Positions 1,716-64,000 of a DNA stretch of 64,000 nt are shown here, piece by piece (position 1 is the stretch's first letter; every line of letters begins with the position of its first letter). The stretch spans positions 95,757,239 to 95,821,238 of the forward strand of contig NC_068989.1 in assembly GCF_001194135.2 (NCBI RefSeq). Reading direction: 5' to 3'. Both the position numbers and the translations under genes were made by a program. The notes beneath the pieces are model-generated. The model worked only from the letters and a program-made list of their open reading frames with translations, did not search any database and was not told where the DNA came from. Source of the stretch: Octopus bimaculoides (Eukaryota).

Positions 1716-2892
1716 ATTCCATGAACCAAGCCAGTTTGGAAAAGAAGGACCTAGAAGCTTAAGGATTCTCTGAATAGTCAGAGATTTAGAGATGTCCCTA
1801 ACTGAAGCATTTAAGGAGAAAGAGGAAGAATTAAAGAAATGTACCATAGAGGATAACTGAACGTTCCTACAAGACAACTTATTGAGAGCCACAGACAAAA
1901 TTTGTGGCTGGTGCAAAGTCCCAACCAGACCTAGGGTGACATGGTGGTGGAACAGAGTAGTTGACAGGGCCATTAGAGCAAAGAAGCAGGACTGGAAGAG
2001 TGGCAGTAGCAAGGAACTGTATCAGGTAACAAGAAGGGAAGCTAGTAGGCAGGTATACTCAGCCAGGAGGGAAGCAGAGAGGAAGAAGTTTGCCAATAGT
2101 CTGCAGCATGAGGACCAGCAGCTTGATGTGTTTAGGCTTGCAAGACAGTGTGCCAGGGAAAACTGTGATGTTATTAGAGAGAAGTGTATTCACATGGATG
2201 ATGGTTCACTTGCAGTTAGTGACTCTGTAAAGAAAGAGGTTTGGAAGTGCCATTATGAAAGGCTGCTGAATGCAGAGGACTCATGAGAGAAGGAGATTCT
2301 GCCTAAGGTGAATCTAACACAGGGACCTGCTACATGAATAGACAGTAGCTTAGTACATAAAGCCATGAAAGATATGAAGACAAGAAAAGTCCCTGGCCCA
2401 TCACTGCTGAGATGCTTAAAATATCTGGTGATGTGGGTTATGGTCCCATCACTTGCATAGTCAATCAGATTGTACACAAGGGAGTCATACTTAATGACTG
2501 ATGTAGCAGCACCATAATCAACTCCTACAAAGGCAAAGGTGATGCCTTAGACAGAAATACTTACAGAGGTATCAAGTTGCTGGATCAGGTGATGAAAGTT
2601 ACGGAGAAGATCATAGTCCAATTAATTAGGGAGAGAGTTAGGCTAGACGAGATGCAGTTTTGTTTTGTGCCAGGGAGATACACCACTGATGTTATATTCC
2701 TGGTAAGGCAGCTGCAGAAGTACTTAACCAAAAATAAACCTCTATGCTCAGCTTTTATTCACATGGTGATGGCCTTCGACAGAGTCCCCCACTCCCTTAT
2801 CTGGTAGTCATTGCAGAAACTAGGGATAGAGGGGTGGTTGGTGAGAGCTGTTGAAGCATGGAAAAGTGGACATTAAAATGATGATGATGATG
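1716..2892 (+). mobile_element. RTE-clade LINE fragment (linker plus N-terminal RT), internally deleted, with (GAT)n tail
   Basis: Translations include TWWWN...KKEVWKCHYERLLN and MQFCFVPGRYTTDVIFLVRQLQK...AFDRVP, typical RTE/BovB-like RT motifs, with stops and frameshifts. Near 2855 the sequence jumps to the 3' terminus agcatggaaaagtggacattaaaatgatgatg. Confidence 0.9.
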
Positions 2893-3469: not shown

Positions 3470-3680
3470 TACCAGGTGACCTTGCCAGTGCTGGTGCCAA
3501 TTAAAAAGCATCTAGTCCAAACCATAAAGTGGCTGGCATTAGGAAGGGCATTCAGCTGTAAAAACCATGCCAAAACAGACACAGAAGTATGGTGCAGGCT
3601 CTCAAAACCATCAAACCCATGCCAGCATGGAAGGAGTACATTAAACGACGACGACGACGATGATGATGATGATATATATA
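3470..3680 (+). mobile_element. RTE 3'-end repeat
   Basis: ggcattaggaagggcattcagctgta...aacccatgccagcatgga...(gac)n(gat)n. Confidence 0.85.
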
Positions 3681-3784
3681 TATATATCATCATCATCATC
3701 ATAGTTTAACGTCTGCTTTCCATGCTGGCATGGGTTGGACAGTTTGACTGGGGACTAGCAAGCCAGGAGGCTGCACCAGGCTCC
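3681..3784 (-). mobile_element. RTE 3'-end repeat, opposite orientation (tail-to-tail with the previous copy)
   Basis: (cat)n...gtttaacgtctgctttccatgctggcatgggttggac is the reverse complement of the same terminus. Confidence 0.85.
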
Positions 3785-14067: not shown

Positions 14068-14644
14068 NNNNNNNNNNNNNNNNNNNNNNNNNNNNNNNNN
14101 NNNNNNNNNNNNNNNNNNNNNNNNNNNNNNNNNNNNNNNNNNNNNNNNNNNNNNNNNNNNNNNNNNNNNNNNNNNNNNNNNNNNNNNNNNNNNNNNNNNN
14201 NNNNNNNNNNNNNNNNNNNNNNNNNNNNNNNNNNNNNNNNNNNNNNNNNNNNNNNNNNNNNNNNNNNNNNNNNNNNNNNNNNNNNNNNNNNNNNNNNNNN
14301 NNNNNNNNNNNNNNNNNNNNNNNNNNNNNNNNNNNNNNNNNNNNNNNNNNNNNNNNNNNNNNNNNNNNNNNNNNNNNNNNNNNNNNNNNNNNNNNNNNNN
14401 NNNNNNNNNNNNNNNNNNNNNNNNNNNNNNNNNNNNNNNNNNNNNNNNNNNNNNNNNNNNNNNNNNNNNNNNNNNNNNNNNNNNNNNNNNNNNNNNNNNN
14501 NNNNNNNNNNNNNNNNNNNNNNNNNNNNNNNNNNNNNNNNNNNNNNNNNNNNNNNNNNNNNNNNNNNNNNNNNNNNNNNNNNNNNNNNNNNNNNNNNNNN
14601 NNNNNNNNNNNNNNNNNNNNNNNNNNNNNNNNNNNNNNNNNNNN
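14068..14644. other. Assembly gap (other gaps: 14787-14796, 18694-19069, 39789-39910, 41162-41706, 47820-48330, 61822-61922)
   Basis: Runs of N. Confidence 1.
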
Positions 14645-14883: not shown

Positions 14884-17557
14884 TTCAAAAGTTTGTAAAA
14901 TTGATTAAGCCTGTGTATGAATTCTAAAACTGTGGCTAGTGATCAACTTTGGAAGAGAAACTTAATGAATTTTATTAACAGTTACATTGTTAACACAAAC
15001 CAATAGCATGTCCAGATTTTCATCCTATTTTTCTCAATGAATTATTATAATTTTTAACAGCTGTGTAACATTGATTTCTAAATTTAAGTAAAAGTCCACA
15101 CCATTTCTGGAGACAGTAAATTCCAATATTTGACTGGTATTGCTTCCCCACCACGTACTATGGATGAAAAGTAGGGAATCGAACTCAGAACATAAGGGGA
15201 TGTAACTAAATATTGCATGGTATTTTGTCAATCACTTTATTGATTTTGTCAATGTAATATTATTTTGCCTTGGGCCCTTCTCATGAAGCTGAGACACTGC
15301 TGTGAAATTCCAAATCTGACCACAGCCAATTTCCTCCATAAAGAGAGAGAAAGAAATAGAGAGAGAGAGAAAGAGTGGTAAAAGAATTGACTCCTGTCAA
15401 GGACTGACTGATACTTTATCGGTCAGTCTCCAGAAGAAAGGCAAGGTTGACCTCAGAGTGCAGAGAGCCAGAATGAATAACACAAGACAAGCTAGCCGAT
15501 GCTCTAACAACTCAGCCATTTAATGTAATAATATCAAGCATCAGTGTGTCTAAGAATATTGTTCTGAACTAGCTGGTTTAGTGCAATATTGTTTAAGATA
15601 TAACTGCAAATAGTTGAAATTTAAAGTACATTTATCAGTACTAATTGGAAGGTTTAGATCCAATATCCATTTATAAGAAATCGAATTAAATAATGAAACA
15701 ATAAAAAAAAATCTCATATACCCTCCAATGAGAAATGTATTTGATATTTCTGAGAAAAAAACCATCAAAACATATATTTTCGTCTTTATTGATTGCAATA
15801 GATTTTAATAACTTGACTTCTTTATTTAGAAACAGTTTTATAACTATGAGATACAAAAAGAGAATAGAATAATGAAAAGTATGCTCAACAAGAGATTTAT
15901 AAAAGGGAGAGACAGAATAACAGAATGAGAGAGAAAGGAGACAGTAAGAGAGAGAGAGAGAGAGCGATAGAGTGATAAGATAGTGACAGAGAGTGCTATG
16001 AGAAGGACAAATTTATGGGTAAGAGCAAGTGCTGAGAAAGTGACAGAAAGAAGTTGGGGGGGGGGAGAAAAAGAGTTGCCACTGATATTAGATTCAGATA
16101 TAGCACATTAACCAGAATGAGGCATATAAATAGTTTTGGTTATCTTAAATGTACCACATTTACTTTTGGGGCAGTTTAGGTTTTTCTGAATATGAAATAA
16201 ACTGATACAGTTTATTTCATACTTAGACTATGACAAGACTATAAATGGCCAAGTTAAGAAGGTATTATGCAATCAGCCCAGAGTTCAATAGATTGAACCT
16301 GTCCCCTAGTACATTTCTTGAGCAAGACACATAGGTGTCAATAATGAGAGGCTATCTAGTAGTAAATAGGCACAACAAGAAACAAGTAGCTGCAGTAAGT
16401 GATTTTGTTTATCTTGAAATATTGATATCAATTGTTGCTTTTTATGTTGTAACTTAGAAAGGGATGAACTCTGCAAAACTATCAACCCCTAGATTCATTA
16501 CATGTATTCTTCAGTGTCAGTCACTAAAAGCCTGATGGGTTGGATCCACCAAATACCCTTTCACTGGATAACACTACACAGGACCTTGGGCAATTGTATC
16601 TTACCATAGACTCAGATTAACCAAAGCATTCTTAGTAAAATCTAGGAAACAAACTGTATGGAATTTGTCAGAGGAGCTGTTCTTGTTCCTGGGTGGTAGG
16701 ACTTAATTTTCCACCCTAAAAAATCAATATGGTGGCCAACGTGCACCTTAAGTAGAGTCCACTCTGTTCCCTGCTGCAAGTATTCAGACCAAGTCTCTAG
16801 TTTGTGGATGAATTGGTCTTCATCCACCTACCACTCTAAGAGGCTTTGAAAAGGTTGACACAGAAAGCTCTTCCAACTCTGACTAAATGATAAGAGGAAA
16901 GAGTACGAGGTGTCATCCATCTTAATGAAGCACAGAAATACTATTATTTACAGGCTTGTAATTTGACCATCATTTTCTCTTGTAAAAAAAAAAGTCTATT
17001 GCAACAGTAGTTAGCTTTGACATTTAGAATATTGCTAGCAGTATTTATAAAGGAACAAAAAGTATTGCATTTCATTCAGATAGCAGAGGTTTTTGTTCAG
17101 AGAGCATATAGACAATTCTCACATTTTAGGTTTTTAACTTCTCTTACAAGTATTTTATATATTTAAATTACTATTTACTTCTTAGCAAACATTAACAAAA
17201 TAGAGCAGTCATTATTATAGCAACAATTCATGGAAACAGCAATTTTTCAAAATGTTAAAAATCAAATTACAGAAGTGATAATTTAAAAGACTAATTTTCG
17301 CAAGCAAAACATGAATACTAAATATGATATTGTTCTTTTTAACAGAAAAATTAAAATAAAATACTTTCGTGGTAATTTAGCTATGTATTATTACTTCATA
17401 GTGCCAAAGTTGATCTTTCAAGGGATATAACTGGTGTGAAAAGGAGTATCTATATAAGCAAAGCTGTCTAGTTTAGAGCATAATCAATCTCCAAGTAAAT
17501 CCAGGGAACATTTTTATTTATTACCACATACCTTTTTCTTTTCTTTTTTTTGTTGTT

Positions 17558-17579
17558 GTACTTATTTGCGGTACATATT

Positions 17580-17612
<33 letters not shown>

Positions 17613-17662
17613 GGCCCCTACGCAAGGATGAAATGCAAATTCATGAAGCATTCCATATTTTT
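17558..17662 (+). pseudogene. U6: U6 snRNA copy (probable retro-pseudogene)
   Basis: From 17573 the sequence matches canonical U6 at 83/89 positions by my alignment. ACAGAGA and AGC are intact and the copy ends in TTTTT. Three of the six changes are CpG transitions, and the 5' stem-loop is damaged. Confidence 0.95.
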
Positions 17663-17664
17663 CT

Positions 17665-17724
17665 GCTTATGGCCATATCACATTGAAAGCAATGGTTCTC
17701 GTTTGATCACCTAAGTTAAGCAAC
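17665..17724 (+). pseudogene. 5S: 5S rRNA fragment, nt 1-60
   Basis: gcttatggccatatcacattgaaagcaatggttctcgtttgatcacctaagttaagcaac aligns without gaps to the 5' half of metazoan 5S (41/58 to the human sequence from memory, plus protostome-type GGTTCTCGT..GATCACC and AGTTAAGCAAC). It ends within box A; the IE and box C are absent. Confidence 0.85.
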
Positions 17725-18441
17725 AATGTCAGTGTGCATACACAACAGAGTGTAAGCGCTCGGAGAGAAAAGTTGGACATAAGAAGCATCAGATGTGGTG
17801 TGAAACAGAGATGACTGCACTGGTATGATCATGTATTGCGTATGGATGAGGACAGCTGTGTGAAGAAGTGTCACACCCTAACAGTGGAGGGAACCTGTGG
17901 AAGAGGTAGACCCAGGAAGACCTAAAATGAGGTGGTGAAGCATGACCATCGAAAGTTGGGCCTCACAGAGGCAATGACAAGCGACCAAGACCTTTGGAGA
18001 TATGCTGTGCTTGAGAAGACCCGGCAAGTCAAGTGAGACTGTAGCCATGGCCAATGCCAGGGTGGCATAACTGGCTTGTTTAAAAGTATCCTTCAATTGT
18101 TGGGCTATATGTCATGCTTGAGAAAACCTATTGAATCAAGTGAAATCTTTATCATGGCCGATGCCAGTGCTGCCTGACTGCTCCCATGCTGGTGGCACAT
18201 AAAAAGCACCATTCGAGCATGATCAATTCCAGTGCCGCCTAACTGGCTCCCGTGCCGGTGGCACGTAAAATATACCACGCTACACTTTCGGAGTGGCTGG
18301 CAAGGGCATCCAGCTGTAGAAATCTTGTGAGATCAGATTGGAGTCTGGTGCAGCCTCCTGGCTTGCCGGTCCTCAGTCAAATCGTCAAACCTGTGCCAGC
18401 ATGGAAAGCGGATGTTAAACAATGATGATGATGATGATGAT
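17725..18441 (+). mobile_element. RTE LINE 3' end: C-terminal ORF, 3' UTR and (GAT)n tail
   Basis: A single frame at 17725-18036 gives NVSVHTQQSVSARREKLDIRSIRCGVKQR*LHWYDHVLRM...GTCGRGRPRKT*...LWRYAVLEKTRQVK* (RTE LRWxGHVxRM and GxRxRGRP motifs). Hairpin units and the conserved terminus follow. Confidence 0.92.
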
Positions 18442-18450
18442 ATATATATA

Positions 18451-18650
18451 CTCAATCCAAACATGAACAAGCAAGAAAAAACAACGCGAGGCCGTGGAAT
18501 AAGTACAGTGTTATTGGACGCTCAGGAAAGGAAAGAAAAGAAAGAGGATTTCATGTTTTGAGTGGAGCTCTTCATCAGAAATATAGAAAAAGTCCTAAAA
18601 AGGGAAGATGGAGAAAGAAAAACGCCAACGATACACACATTATATATGTG
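18451..18650 (-). mobile_element. Non-autonomous repeat with a Penelope-like terminal motif
   Basis: The minus strand reads ctgatgaagagctccactcaaaacatg, resembling PLE terminal and hammerhead-type motifs. It is truncated by the N gap. Confidence 0.45.
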
Positions 18651-44036: not shown

Positions 44037-44169
44037 CGTTGACCATATATATATATATATATACGTGTGTGTGTGTGTGTGTTTGTGCATGCACATTTTT
44101 GTGTCTGTGTATTTATATATCTCTGCCATTCACTTATTTGAAAGTCACATAGTTCACATGAAGCTGGTA

Positions 44170-45435
44170 CGCTCCACTAGATGCACAATGTCAGTGTATG
44201 TGTGCAACAGAGAGCTAGTATACTAAGAGAGAAGTTAGGCATAAAAGGAATTAGATGCAGAATGCAAGAAAGAAGACTGCACTGGTTTGGTCATATGGTG
44301 TGTACAGTTGCATAAAGAAATGACAAGCTCTTAAAGTGGATGGAACTTGTAAAAGAAGGAGACTCAAGAAGTCATGGTATAAAGAAGGCCAATCTCAAAA
44401 TGCTGCACCTTATGAAGGAGTTGACAACGGACCAAGTTGCCTGGCACCTTGCTAAACTCAAGAAAACCTGTCCACCACAGAATTGATACCCTAAAACCAC
44501 CTTGGTAATGCTTACCTCCATCCTCTCTGCCCCATCAACCTTCCCCCACCACTCACATTTCATCCCTTAACACCCATCACTTTCTCTATCACCTGAGAGC
44601 AGAGTAGGCACATACTACACCTCCTGGCTTTCTCAGTTACCTTACTCCCCTCTTCCACTTACCTCTCCCCCACACCTACTGTCTTCACCAATCACCTCCT
44701 TTCTGTGCCTTCTCTCTCCTCCCTGTGCTGCTCTCCATCATTAGCTCTTTGCTTACATGCTAACAGCTACAATGCCTTCACAGATCTGCTGCAACACCCC
44801 CACCCCTGTGCCTCTCCTAGATCTCCATCCTTTGCTAGTCACCTCATCCCGCCCATTCACACAGCCCAAGCCTCTATATATCACCTCACCTATTCTCACC
44901 ACCCCCAATGTTCCTCAAGGGCATGTCCTGACACATCTCCATCACATCATTTCTCTGACTATCACTCTCTTTATCATACTCTCTAACTCAGTCTCATTTG
45001 TTTCCCAACTAGGGTGTCTATGTATCTACTCTACAGTGAGACACCTATCTATATCTGTCCCTTCTATACTTTAAATCTCTCAACTGGCTCAAAGCCACAC
45101 TCCATCAGTTCTACTCTCCCCTCCCAGTTAAGGAGTTTTTGTCATACAACCTACTTGGTGCCACATAAAAAGCACTGGTACTGGTGCCATGTTAAAAGTA
45201 CCTGCAATGGTGCCACATAATAAAGCATTGGTGAAGGTACCATGTAAAAAGCACTGGTGATGGTACCATGTAAAGAGCACCTGGTACACTATGTAAAGCG
45301 AGGTGGCATTAAGAAGGACGTCCAGCTGTAGAAACTATGCCAAAATAGACAATTAGAACCTGGTGCAACTCCTGTCAAACGCAGCCCATGCCAGCATGGA
45401 AAATGGATGTTAAAAGATGATGATGATGATGCTGA
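44170..45435 (+). mobile_element. Older RTE LINE 3' end with long pyrimidine-rich UTR, 26-bp hairpin array and (GAT)n tail
   Basis: NVSVCVQQRASILREKLGIKGIRCRMQERRLHWFGHM is homologous to 17725-17850. The terminus ccatgccagcatggaaaatggatgttaaaagatgatgatg lies near 45385-45430. Confidence 0.8.
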
Positions 45436-48692: not shown

Positions 48693-49003
48693 AGAGGGAA
48701 CAAGGCTCCTGGAGTTCTGCGATGTAAATAACCTATTGATCTGCAACACCAACTTCAAGAAGCCTGCTAGCCACCTGATAACCAATCAACCAGGTGACTC
48801 TGCTAGCCAGATCAATTTCATTTTCACCAGACTGCAGGATGCACGGCTGCTCTTAAATACAAAGACATTCCCTGGTGAAGAATGTACCCCCCAGCATAGA
48901 CTAGTTATTAGTGACTTTAGACTTAAGGCCAGAAGGATACCAAAAAGCAGACCAATGTGGAAAAGAAGGACTTGGAGGCTTAAGAACCCTTCACATGGTC
49001 AAT
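48693..49003 (+). mobile_element. RTE LINE AP-endonuclease C-terminal fragment
   Basis: EGTRLLEFCDVNNLLICNTNFKKPASHLIT...SQINFIFTR...PGEECTPQHRLVISDF (APE IDY- and SDH-equivalent motifs of the RTE clade). Confidence 0.88.
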
Positions 49004-49009
49004 GGTATA

Positions 49010-49510
49010 TAAAAAGCACTATCCGAATGTGATCGATGCCAGGACAACCTGATTGTCCCCATACCAGTGGCACATAAAAAGCACCATCCGCATGTGGCCT
49101 ATGCCAGTACCCCCTAACTGGCTTCCATGCCAGTAACATGTAAAAAGCACCATCCGAATGTGGTTGGTGCCAGGACCCCCTGACTGGCTCCCATGCCAGT
49201 GGAACGTAAAAAGCACTATTTGAAAGTGATTTATGCCAGGACCGCCTTACTGGCCCCTGTGCCGGTGACATGTAAAAAGTTCCATCTGAACATGGCCAAT
49301 GCCAGCACCCCCTGACTGGCTCCTGTGCTGGTGGCATGTAAAAAGCACTCACTACAACTCTCAGAGTGGTTGGCGTTAGGAAGGGCATCCAGCTGTAGAA
49401 ACATTGTCAGATCAGATTGGAGCCTGTTGCAGCTGCTGGCTCTACAGACCTCAGTCAAACCGTCCAACCCATGCCAGCATGGAAAACGGACATTAAACGA
49501 TGATGATGAT
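49010..49510 (+). repeat. Five 66-bp tandem units plus RTE 3' terminus and (GAT)n
   Basis: AAAAAG anchors at 49011, 49076, 49142, 49208, 49274 and 49340. Confidence 0.92.
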
Positions 49511-59597: not shown

Positions 59598-59671
59598 GGC
59601 TGGTTAGCTCAGTTAGTTAGAGCATCATGCTGATAACATGAATGTCATGGGACCGAGCCCCATACTGGCCA
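59598..59671 (+). pseudogene. tRNA-Ile-derived pseudogene, anticodon GAT
   Basis: Full cloverleaf: GGCTGGT/ACTGGCC, GCTC/GAGC, TCATG/CATGA with loop CTGATAA, and ATGGG/CCCAT. It is colinear with eukaryotic tRNA-Ile(AAU). The T-loop/B box is damaged (ACCGAGC) and nearly all CpGs have decayed. Confidence 0.88.
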
Positions 59672-63109: not shown

Positions 63110-64000
63110 ATAGCATCTCTCCTCTCTAAGAACAATGTGACATGGAAAAGGCTTTAACAATGGAGAAAAGTCTGTCATCATCAAGGAAAGTGCTAAAGGC
63201 ACCTCTCTTCATGTCATTGCTGAAAAGTTAGGTCATCATGTGGACATGGTTAGACAATTCCTGAAGGACCATTTGCCAACGAAGGAATGATCCAATTGTG
63301 GGACGCTGGCTGCAAGTTACATGGGAAACCTGGACAAACAAGCAAAGCCATTTTCACTGCTTCTGGACTTCCTCGTGTACCAAAAGCCACCAGAAACTGC
63401 ATCCTCGGAACCATGGCATCTGTGCGAGGACCCCTGAAACTGCCTCCTTTAACACCCTGTCACAGAAGTTTGAGGCTTCAATGTGCCCAAAAGTATATGA
63501 CATTAGACATGAGTAGTGTTCTGTTCACTGACAAAACTAGGACAACCCTTGATGGACTTAAGAGTTGAGCAAATGGTTGGGTCTATTTGGGAGATGAGTG
63601 TCACCAACGTTTATGACATCAAAAACAGGGAGGAGGAGTCATGTTGTAGGCTGGTATCATTGGAGACAAACTTGTTGGCTTAGTCAGGGTGAGCCTGAAG
63701 GGGTTAAAGTGACTGCAATCTCCTGAAGGAGGTCTTGGATCCCTGGCTAGATGACATATCACTGTCACTTCTAAGGAATCTCATATTCATGCATGACAAC
63801 ACTCTCTCCCACTCTGCTAGGACCACCCAAACATTACTAGGGTCTTATGGCATACAAGGTAAAAGGTTGATGGTGTGGCTGCTAGCATCTCCAGATCTCA
63901 TCCATAACAAAAAAATCTTTGATCCATCATTAATCAAGATGTTTATGTCGATAGATGCAAATTTACATCGAAAGATGTCTTATGGGCAACCATCAAAGCT
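63110..64000 (+). mobile_element. Tc1-family transposase pseudogene (continues beyond the window)
   Basis: HTH-like IAEKLGHHVDMVRQFL, then VLFTDKTRTTLDG (first D region), QGGGVML*AGII, IFMHDN and MVWLLASPDL (WPxxSPDLNPIE equivalent), with multiple stops and frameshifts. Confidence 0.88.

What the first reader, a model, noticed from the sequence alone, without database searches (positions are those of the whole stretch)
17558..18441. Tripartite U6 snRNA - 5S rRNA - RTE LINE chimera
Seen: full-length U6 ending in its TTTTT, a 2-nt spacer (CT), 5S rRNA starting at its first nucleotide and stopping at nt 60, then immediately the last 104 codons of an RTE ORF (AATGTCAGTGTG; the same ACAATGTCAGTGT occurs in the RTE copy near 44185), its 3' UTR and (GAT)n tail. 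All parts are on one strand and show CpG decay. Known: U6/L1 and other small RNA/LINE chimeras arise in mammals by template switching or by RtcB ligation to the U6 3' end. 5S-headed (SINE3) and snRNA-headed SINEs exist. Inference: this is a double template-switch or ligation product made by an RTE RT in a mollusc, which I do not know to have been described. The U6 T-run would stop Pol III read-through, and the 5S piece lacks the IE and box C, so it is probably dead on arrival. If it is multi-copy, it would be a new U6-5S-headed RTE-dependent SINE. No TSD could be seen because the 3' flank is occupied by another repeat and a gap.
Basis: partly seen in the sequence, partly recalled or inferred. 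Interest (0 to 1): 0.85.

Follow-up and report, generated by a model that had tools for sequence, protein, structure and literature searches.

The report
U6-5S-LINE chimeric retrocopy in octopus
An old, dead retrocopy in an octopus genome joins a whole U6 snRNA, the first 60 bases of 5S rRNA and the 3' end of an RTE-like LINE, most likely because the LINE's reverse transcriptase jumped templates twice; this kind of product is already known from vertebrates and a fungus.

Summary
Window 17558-18441, all on the + strand, holds:
- a full-length U6 (Rfam 109 bits);
- a CT spacer;
- 5S rRNA nt 1-60 (36 of the 38.5 bits come from these 60 nt);
- the last 103 codons plus stop of a LINE ORF, then a 3' UTR and a (GAT)6 tail.

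Homology to six other copies of this LINE starts at 17725-17727 for four of them. Every copy that reaches the junction carries LINE ORF upstream (...RWMC|NVSVH), not 5S. So the 5S/LINE junction is private to this copy in about 105 kb of octopus DNA sampled.

Both small-RNA joints sit at RNA ends, which points to joining at the RNA or cDNA level. All three parts are decayed to a similar degree. The best reading is a tripartite chimeric retropseudogene made by two template jumps of an RTE-like reverse transcriptase. It has no usable Pol III promoter.

Three things are not settled. No target-site duplication was found. Copy number and the orthologous empty site could not be tested, because no cephalopod genome search was available. 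The RTE clade assignment was not tested by phylogeny.

U6 chimeras with RTE-like LINEs (Anolis) and tripartite chimeras (human, mouse, Magnaporthe) are already published. This is a new member of a known kind, of modest interest.

The parts
17531..17557 (+). 5' flank: a T-rich stretch (CTTTTTCTTTTCTTTTTTTT) followed by GTTGTT, directly upstream of U6. It may be part of the LINE endonuclease target.
   Evidence: Sequence read. A T-stretch just upstream of the insertion is the published signature of RTE-related insertions (PMC6007223). This is suggestive only.
17558..17662 (+). Full-length U6 snRNA retrocopy, model positions 1-105, ending in T5. It is decayed at conserved positions.
   Evidence: Rfam RF00026, 109.1 bits, E 1.5e-27. 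Three former CpG sites in the 3' third read TG or CA. CCCUGCGCAAGG reads CCCUACGCAAGG (alignment).
17663..17664 (+). 2-nt spacer CT between the U6 3' end and 5S nt 1. It is probably non-templated addition at a template jump.
   Evidence: The origin is inferred.
17665..17724 (+). 5S rRNA nt 1-60. It is 3'-truncated within helix II and box A, and has no intermediate element and no box C.
   Evidence: Rfam RF00001, 36.2 bits for this stretch alone, model 1-61, flagged as truncated at the 3' end.
17725..18036 (+). C-terminal 103 codons plus stop of an RTE-like LINE ORF, with two in-frame stops at 17812 and 17923.
   Evidence: Translation. It is 80-82% identical to L002 481-792 and L004 10956-11268, with alignments starting at 17725. 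Protein relatives P0001 and P0002.
18037..18421 (+). LINE 3' UTR, with degenerate repeats of GGTGGCACATAAAAAGCACC type and the conserved end CCAGCATGGAAAGCGGATGTTAAAC.
   Evidence: Matches to at least six other tails in the window and to L001, L002 and L004.
18422..18441 (+). Microsatellite tail, (GAT)6. This is the normal 3' end of this LINE/SINE tail family.
   Evidence: TRF gives period 3, 6.7 copies, 100% matches. The same tail occurs at 12 or more places in the window.
18442..18451 (.). (AT)5 run directly after the tail. It could be target sequence or a tail extension; this is undecided.
   Evidence: Several other tails are also followed by (AT)n: 3156, 3673, 39493 and L002.
18553..18621 (+). 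Repeat in the 3' flank. It is not part of the chimera. The same repeat lies downstream of the tail in L002.
   Evidence: 81% identity over 75 nt to L002 1466-1540, E 1e-15.

Best explanation
This is a single, old, non-functional tripartite chimeric retrocopy made by the reverse transcriptase of an RTE-like octopus LINE.

Inferred pathway:
1. Reverse transcription started, target-primed, on the (GAT)n tail of a LINE RNA.
2. It copied the 3' UTR and the last 103 codons.
3. It then left that template, which was a broken RNA end or an aborted copy.
4. It continued on a 5S rRNA 5' fragment ending at nt 60 and ran to 5S nt 1.
5. It added two untemplated bases.
6. It jumped to the 3' oligo-U end of a mature U6 snRNA and copied it to its 5' end.
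7. The cDNA was then integrated.

The product cannot be transcribed by Pol III as a unit. The U6 promoter is external, and U6 ends in its own T5 terminator. The 5S piece lacks the intermediate element and box C. The unit has simply decayed in place.

Shown here: the anatomy, the exact junctions, and that the 5S junction is private to this copy among sampled copies. Inferred: the order of events, template jumping as the joining mechanism, and a single integration event.
For: - U6 is complete, from model position 1 to 105, and ends in T5.
- 5S begins at its nt 1, two bases after U6, and only nt 1-60 are present. Joints that coincide with RNA termini are expected from RNA or cDNA-level joining, not from DNA rearrangement.
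- All parts are on the same strand, in the 5'-small RNA to 3'-LINE order that defines published chimeras (PMC2104539; PMC4476161).
- LINE homology to L002 and L004 begins at 17725-17727. The informative copies continue upstream as ORF ...NEASMLRWMC|NVSVH. The break is therefore a true junction inside the LINE ORF, with 0-2 nt of microhomology.
- The unit ends in the family's normal (GAT)n tail, which occurs 12 or more times in the window.
- No second U6 or 5S head was found in the window, L001, L002 or L004.
- None of the database ORFs that cover this region carries 5S-encoded residues.
- Decay is of one order across the parts. The LINE ORF has 5.5% private substitutions. By hand count against the Rfam consensus, the conserved part of U6 has about 7% changes. 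CpG observed/expected is 0.36-0.47 in the 5S and LINE parts.
- The U6 and 5S copies are mutated rather than canonical, which argues against a false assembly join to live gene reads.
- The only run of T4 or longer in the unit is the U6 terminator.
Against: - No direct repeat of 8 nt or more flanks the unit, so a single integration event is not demonstrated.
- The 3' flank is an (AT)n run, then a repeat, then a gap.
- 5S is truncated at nt 60, inside a helix. Classical end-to-end jumping needs a pre-existing 5S fragment, for which there is no direct evidence.
- Copy number in the genome is unknown. A published O. vulgaris repeat library lists SINE/5S (4 families, 9.8 Mb) and SINE/U (1 family, 369 kb) classes whose sequences I could not see.
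- The reference used to count 5S changes was recalled from memory, so the apparent higher divergence of the 5S piece (about 10 of 60) is soft.
- The clade of the LINE was not tested by phylogeny.
Confidence: 0.68

Rival explanations
1. Two-step origin. A bipartite 5S(1-60)/LINE chimera, or a 5S-headed LINE-tailed element or SINE, already existed and was transcribed. U6 was added to its 5' end by one template jump in a later round of retrotransposition. Alternatively, the middle piece comes from the head of a 5S-derived SINE rather than from 5S rRNA itself.
For: SINE/5S families cover 9.8 Mb of the O. vulgaris genome. 5' additions of small-RNA copies onto existing SINEs by template switch are documented (PMC4494074). 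The 5S part begins at nt 1, as a Pol III transcript of a 5S-headed element would.
Against: No other copy with the 5S/LINE junction was found among about 9 copies or ORFs that cover this region. A 5S piece ending at nt 60 lacks box C, so it could not drive its own transcription. The two extra bases upstream of 5S nt 1 are explained equally well by a jump within one event.
Confidence: 0.12
2. The unit is one member of a multi-copy, U6-5S-headed family mobilised through the RTE-like tail. That would make it a new SINE-like family, perhaps the one labelled SINE/U or SINE/5S in octopus repeat libraries.
For: The tail is the one recognised by a very successful LINE/SINE system, with 12 or more tails in 64 kb. 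The O. vulgaris library has one SINE/U family, with 19 recent insertions totalling 13,954 bp, about 730 bp each. No T4 run interrupts the 780 nt after U6.
Against: There is no usable promoter: the U6 promoter is external, U6 ends in T5, and 5S lacks the IE and box C. No second copy was found in about 105 kb of octopus DNA. Junction patterns were absent from the metagenome and viral collections, though these collections are uninformative for cephalopods. The coding-region remnant and the 884-bp length are atypical for a SINE.
Confidence: 0.07
3. RNA ligation rather than template jumping made one or both joints. For example, RtcB joined an RNA end carrying a 2',3'-cyclic phosphate to a 5'-OH fragment, and the ligated RNA was then copied in one pass.
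For: RtcB ligation of U6 to L1 RNA has been shown experimentally (PMC6789731). A 5S fragment cut after nt 60 and a broken LINE RNA would be suitable partners. That joint has no filler bases and 0-2 nt of microhomology.
Against: At the U6 joint there are two extra bases. The partner also begins at 5S nt 1, which by established knowledge carries a 5' triphosphate and is not a 5'-OH substrate. U6 chimeras of stringent LINEs (L2, RTE-like) have been attributed to template switching (PMC4476161).
Confidence: 0.12
4. The parts arrived independently. A resident U6 gene or pseudogene was hit just after its T5 terminator by a separate 5S/LINE insertion, or a DNA-level rearrangement joined the pieces.
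For: No TSD brackets the whole unit. RTE-type endonucleases favour sites near T-stretches (PMC6007223), and the U6 terminator is a T-stretch.
Against: An independent hit within 2 nt of a U6 3' end, on the same strand, is very improbable. There is no TATA-like sequence at -24 to -31 of U6; the sequence there is CATACCTT. Both inner boundaries coincide with RNA termini. All parts show similar decay.
Confidence: 0.05
5. Assembly artefact. The scaffold joins unrelated repeats.
For: The scaffold comes from a gapped assembly, with N runs at 14068, 18694 and elsewhere. All three components are repetitive in the genome.
Against: The 884 bp are gap-free. 5S and the LINE share no k-mer long enough to fuse assembly graph paths; the shared sequence is at most 2-4 nt. 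The U6 and 5S copies are mutated pseudogene versions, not the canonical sequences that reads from live genes would give.
Confidence: 0.03

Closest known systems
U6/LINE chimeric retropseudogenes: U6-L1 in mammals, U6-L2 in platypus, U6-RTEX-2 in Anolis (Buzdin 2002; Doucet et al. 2015, PMC4476161)
   Same: A full-length U6 ending in its U-tract is fused in sense orientation to a 5'-truncated LINE that keeps its own 3' end. The junction lies at an arbitrary internal LINE position. For 'stringent' LINEs such as L2 and RTE, the only U6 pseudogene type seen is the chimera.
   Different: Here a 5S fragment sits between U6 and the LINE. The host is a cephalopod mollusc. No TSD was found. Two filler bases follow U6.
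Tripartite chimeric retroelements: WEIRD-MgSINE-MGL in Magnaporthe, B2-U6-L1 in mouse, and two human cases (Gogvadze et al. 2007, PMC2104539)
   Same: Three different transcripts are fused head to tail with the LINE at the 3' end. These cases are interpreted as two successive template switches in one retrotransposition event.
   Different: The fungal and mouse cases have 14-16 bp TSDs that prove a single integration. Here, as in the two human cases, the flanks are low-complexity and no TSD is seen. The middle part here is a small-RNA fragment truncated at its 3' side, not a 5'-truncated SINE.
5S rRNA/L1 chimeric insertions in mammals (PMC11838501)
   Same: A truncated 5S piece whose nt 1 lies at a junction is joined to the 3' part of a LINE. 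Those authors suggest that such pieces may be pre-existing fragments.
   Different: The mammalian 5S pieces are mostly antisense and break at about nt 46 and about nt 90, in loops C and D. Here the piece is in sense orientation and breaks at nt 60.
SINE3 / 5S-RTE SINEs and SINEU, the snRNA-headed SINEs (Kapitonov and Jurka 2003; Kojima 2015, PMC4494074; Kojima 2018, PMC5786205)
   Same: A small-RNA head is combined with a LINE-derived 3' tail. Template switching is the proposed birth mechanism, so this locus looks like a still-born example of that process.
   Different: SINE3 keeps the whole 5S internal promoter. SINEU heads are U1 or U2, and those elements are multi-copy. This unit has no working promoter, carries 309 nt of LINE coding sequence, and is not known to be multi-copy.

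Membership tests
LINE-mediated chimeric retrocopy (U6/LINE type) | The 5' part is a full-length copy of a small cellular RNA. | tested here: met
   U6 covers model positions 1-105 of 105 at 109 bits.
LINE-mediated chimeric retrocopy (U6/LINE type) | The 3' part is a 5'-truncated LINE that ends in the LINE's normal 3' end. | tested here: met
   LINE homology runs from 17725 to the (GAT)n tail. Other copies continue upstream as ORF.
LINE-mediated chimeric retrocopy (U6/LINE type) | The parts are directly fused in the same transcriptional orientation. | tested here: met
   All parts are on the + strand. There are 2 nt between U6 and 5S and 0 nt between 5S and the LINE.
LINE-mediated chimeric retrocopy (U6/LINE type) | The whole unit is flanked by a target-site duplication. 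| tested here: inconclusive
   No shared k-mer of 8 nt or more between 120 nt upstream and 250 nt downstream. The 3' flank is (AT)n, then a repeat, then a gap.
Tripartite chimera by double template switch | Three distinct transcripts are fused in one insertion event. | tested here: inconclusive
   Three parts are shown. A single event is inferred only from RNA-end joints and similar decay. There is no TSD and no empty site.
SINE (SINE3/5S-headed or snRNA-headed) | The head contains an internal Pol III promoter. For 5S this is box A, the IE and box C. | tested here: not met
   5S stops at nt 60. The IE (about 67-72) and box C (about 80-97) are absent. U6 ends in T5 upstream of the 5S piece.
SINE (SINE3/5S-headed or snRNA-headed) | Many dispersed copies share the same head/body junctions. 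| not testable with these tools
   No cephalopod genome search was available. There were 0 further copies in about 105 kb sampled and 0 junction hits in other collections.
SINE (SINE3/5S-headed or snRNA-headed) | The 3' tail is shared with a partner LINE. | tested here: met
   The 3' UTR and (GAT)n tail are shared with LINE copies L002 and L004 and with many short elements.
RTE clade of non-LTR retrotransposons | A single ORF with an AP-endonuclease followed by the RT, and no ORF1. | tested here: inconclusive
   L004 8982-11240 shows an endonuclease-end/linker, RVT_1, a PHD finger and a C-terminal domain in order, but the copy is 5'-truncated and frameshifted. The 5' end was not seen.
RTE clade of non-LTR retrotransposons | The 3' end is made of short A/T-rich microsatellite repeats rather than poly(A). 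| tested here: met
   A (GAT)n tail is found on all copies. This feature is described for RTE in PMC9115989.
RTE clade of non-LTR retrotransposons | The RT domain falls inside the RTE clade in a phylogeny. | not tested
   No reference set was at hand. Relatives returned carry no clade names.
RtcB-ligated U6/LINE chimeric RNA | The U6 3' end is joined directly to a 5'-OH RNA fragment. | tested here: not met
   Two extra bases follow U6, and the partner starts at 5S nt 1. That this end is a triphosphate rests on established knowledge, not on a test here.
Functional U6 snRNA gene | Upstream type-3 promoter (TATA at about -30, PSE) and intact conserved positions. | tested here: not met
   Positions -24 to -31 read CATACCTT. 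Several conserved positions are changed (alignment). No octopus U6 gene was available for comparison.

The most novel reading that the evidence does not exclude
The locus is one copy of an amplifying U6-5S-headed, RTE-tailed family, possibly the unexamined 'SINE/U' or 'SINE/5S' entries of octopus repeat libraries. Such a family would be a SINE-like element that spreads without a canonical internal Pol III promoter.
Probability: 0.07. Interest if true: 0.6.

Novelty: new member of a known kind. Interest (0 to 1): 0.35.

Why it matters
The locus extends the record of LINE-made small-RNA chimeras. It adds a tripartite case to a mollusc and to an RTE-like 'stringent' LINE. That supports the view that template jumping onto U6 and other abundant small RNAs is a general property of non-LTR reverse transcriptases.

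It also shows, in one locus, the raw material from which 5S- or snRNA-headed SINEs could arise. This particular product is promoter-less and dead.

It has no bearing on host gene function. Its practical value is as a clean marker locus for octopus phylogeny and as a pointer for a genome-wide survey of such chimeras in cephalopods.

Tried and rejected
1. A second 5S head in front of the LINE copy at 44125 was considered, because MAFFT aligned TTGAAAG and similar motifs. Rejected: translation shows EAGTLH*MHNVSV, which matches EASMLRWMCNVSV of intact relatives, so this is LINE ORF.

2. A common 5' end for three LINE copies, which would imply a discrete short element, was considered. Rejected for copy44k and for all three L004 copies, which extend upstream. 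L001 is simply truncated about 20 nt further in.

3. I looked up window ORFs that span the junctions in public assemblies, hoping for independent assembly support. They are not on record.

4. I searched for junction patterns in the metagenome and viral contig collections. There were no true hits. The one hit, L003, has no U6 or 5S and is a chance match.

5. I searched for proteins carrying the 5S-encoded residues in front of the LINE C-terminus. None was found.

6. I tried to name the LINE clade from relatives. The 285 hits carry only RVT_1 and PHD domains and no clade names.

7. A hammerhead-ribozyme reading of the 3'-flank repeat was considered, because the minus strand of L002 reads CTGATGA...CGAAAC. 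No Rfam hammerhead model matched.

8. A TSD search found nothing of 8 nt or more.

Full report
**What is there**

Rfam finds a complete U6 snRNA at 17558-17662 on the + strand. It scores 109.1 bits, E 1.5e-27, covers model positions 1-105 of 105, and ends in TTTTT.

Two bases (CT) follow. Then a 5S rRNA match starts at 17665. In the whole-window scan this match just reaches the gathering score (38.5 against 38 bits), with a forced full-length alignment. When 17663-17724 is scanned alone, it scores 36.2 bits, E 8e-7, model positions 1-61, and is flagged as cut at the 3' end. So the 5S homology is real but covers only nt 1-60.

From 17725 the frame reads NVSVHTQQSVSARREKLDIRSIRC...GRGRPRKT*NEVV...LEKTRQVK*. 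That is 103 codons plus the stop at 18034-18036, with two internal stops. A 385-nt 3' UTR follows, then a trinucleotide tail, (GAT)6, at 18422-18441.

**The LINE part and the junction**

The closest proteins are an Octopus vulgaris hypothetical protein (P0001) and ORFs from short ENA contigs. Intact relatives read ...RNEASMLRWMCNVSVHNRQSVS... (P0002, P0004, P0006, P0007). The LINE ORF therefore normally continues upstream of the point where the chimera switches to 5S.

At the DNA level, BLAST alignments begin at:
- 17725 for L002 and for L004 copy a;
- 17727 for L004 copy b;
- 17723 for the window copy at 44125-45430;
- 17763 for L004 copy c, which is on the minus strand;
- 17745 for L001.

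In the multiple alignment, every copy that reaches this region carries ...GATGGATGTGT|AATGTCAGTG upstream, not 5S.

The apparent resemblance of the sequence upstream of 44185 to 5S is LINE coding sequence: EAGTLH*MHNVSV there matches EASMLRWMCNVSV.

The 5S/LINE joint is therefore a genuine, copy-specific breakpoint. Microhomology is 0-2 nt, because 5S reads ...GCAAC and the LINE reads ...TGT or CAC before AATGTC.

The LINE family has, in order:
- an endonuclease-end/linker region (VTWWWN...);
- RVT_1;
- an inserted PHD finger;
- the RLRWYGHV...GRPRKTW C-terminal domain.

This order is seen in L004 8982-11240. Together with the microsatellite tail and the dominance of RTE among octopus LINEs, this fits the RTE group. 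I did not place the RT in a phylogeny, so 'RTE-like' is the honest label.

**Is it a family?**

The tail CCAGCATGGAAA.CGGA.GTTAAAC(GAT)n occurs at least 12 times in the 64-kb window, so the tail system is extremely successful.

The heads are a different matter. There is no further U6 or 5S sequence in the window at E up to 1, in L001, or by sensitive BLAST in L001, L002 and L004. None of the database ORFs that cover the junction region carries the 5S-encoded residues. Junction patterns gave nothing real in the metagenome or viral collections.

These negatives are weak, because no cephalopod genome could be searched. A recent O. vulgaris repeat library lists SINE/5S (4 families, 9.8 Mb) and SINE/U (1 family, 369 kb) classes that I could not inspect. 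Copy number is therefore open.

The element's own anatomy argues against amplification:
- The U6 promoter is external.
- U6 ends in the only T4-or-longer run of the unit.
- The 5S piece lacks the intermediate element and box C.

**How it most likely arose**

Three features fit the published definition of LINE-made chimeric retrocopies:
- The two small-RNA joints coincide with RNA termini: the U6 3' oligo-U end and 5S nt 1.
- All parts share one orientation.
- The order is small RNA at the 5' end and truncated LINE, with its own tail, at the 3' end.

I infer the following pathway:
1. Target-primed reverse transcription started on the LINE tail.
2. The RT jumped to a 5S 5' fragment ending at nt 60.
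3. It ran to 5S nt 1.
4. It added two untemplated bases.
5. It jumped end-to-end onto mature U6.

Untemplated addition and end-to-end jumping are established properties of non-LTR reverse transcriptases. That statement rests on my own knowledge of the R2 and L1 literature.

RtcB-type ligation (PMC6789731) fits the U6 joint poorly. There are filler bases, and the partner should carry a 5' triphosphate. Ligation remains possible for the 5S/LINE joint.

**Age and integrity**

- The LINE ORF part has 14 private substitutions in 255 well-conserved columns, or 5.5%. This is in the range of other copies, 4-10%.
- By hand count against the Rfam consensus printed, the conserved 85 nt of U6 differ at about 6 positions, three of them CpG transitions.
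- The 5S piece differs at about 10 of 60 positions from a metazoan 5S sequence that I recalled from memory. This is a soft figure.
- CpG observed/expected is 0.36-0.47 in the 5S, ORF and UTR parts, against 0.67-0.73 in L002.

Nothing indicates different ages for the parts. The mutated state of U6 and 5S also argues against a false assembly join.

**What is missing**

No direct repeat of 8 nt or more flanks the unit.

The 5' flank is a T-rich stretch. This resembles the reported target signature of RTE-related elements, but such stretches are common in this AT-rich DNA.

The 3' flank is an (AT)5 run, then a repeat that also lies downstream of the tail in L002, then a gap. A single integration event is therefore inferred, not shown.

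**Comparison with what is known**

- U6 chimeras with L2 (platypus) and RTE-like RTEX-2 (Anolis) LINEs are published. They were used to argue that template switching to U6 is general among LINEs (PMC4476161).
- Tripartite chimeras are published for Magnaporthe, mouse and human (PMC2104539).
- 5S/L1 chimeras with truncated 5S are published for mammals (PMC11838501).
- snRNA- and 5S-headed SINEs are known (PMC4494074, PMC5786205).

I found no report of such a chimera in a mollusc, but the library searched is incomplete.

**Verdict**

It is a new member of a known kind and of modest interest. A genome-wide search could still show it to be multi-copy, which would raise its interest.

Noticed in passing
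window 18553-18621; L002 1466-1540: A roughly 70-nt repeat (ATGTTTYGAGTGGAGCTCTTCATCAGAAAYATAGAAAAAG...GGAGAAAGAAAA) lies 56-112 nt downstream of the (GAT)n(AT)n tail in both the window and the unrelated contig L002. It occurs nowhere else in about 105 kb sampled. On the minus strand, the L002 copy reads CTGATGA...CGAAAC, like a hammerhead core, but no Rfam hammerhead model matches. It may be a preferred target, a 3' transduction, or a Penelope-like terminal piece.
   Followed up: partly
window 3659-3700: Two tails of the same family face each other across a shared (AT)7 run: (GAT)5 (AT)7 (ATC)5. Several other tails are also followed by (AT)n. This suggests insertion into, or generation of, AT microsatellites.
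   Followed up: no
window 48736-49510: An ORF resembling the end of the LINE endonuclease domain (QINFIFTRLQDARLLLNTKTFPGEECTPQHRLVISDFRL) runs straight into the 3' UTR repeats and the (GAT)4 tail. This looks like an internally deleted, bipartite non-autonomous LINE derivative of the type discussed by Kojima 2018.
   Followed up: no
window 59598-59671 and downstream to about 59900: A tRNA-Ile(GAT)-like sequence (Rfam 57 bits; also found by ARAGORN) is followed by a second tRNA-like stretch and a CTTGAGCAAGACACTT motif. This is probably the head and body of a tRNA-derived SINE rather than a tRNA gene.
   Followed up: partly
L004 9977-10880; P0013, P0086; window-related LINE family: The LINE family carries a PHD-type zinc finger inserted between the RT core (YADD) and the F.YLG motif. 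At least 285 relatives, at 40-53% identity, occur in other invertebrates, including Hydractinia and Elysia.
   Followed up: partly
window 1882-2286 with tails at 2880 and 3142: Another fragment of the same LINE family, covering the linker region (VTWWWNRVVDRAIRAKK...), lies near two tails. The window is a patchwork of this family.
   Followed up: no
window 63287-63568: This ORF reads like a Tc1/mariner transposase fragment (...VLFTDKTRTTLDG...). This is a judgement from reading only and was not tested.
   Followed up: no
L003 (Ga0137405_1421146) 184-211: This is the only metagenome hit to a generic pattern for a U6 3' end followed by a 5S 5' end. It has no U6 or 5S by Rfam and is a chance match.
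   Followed up: yes
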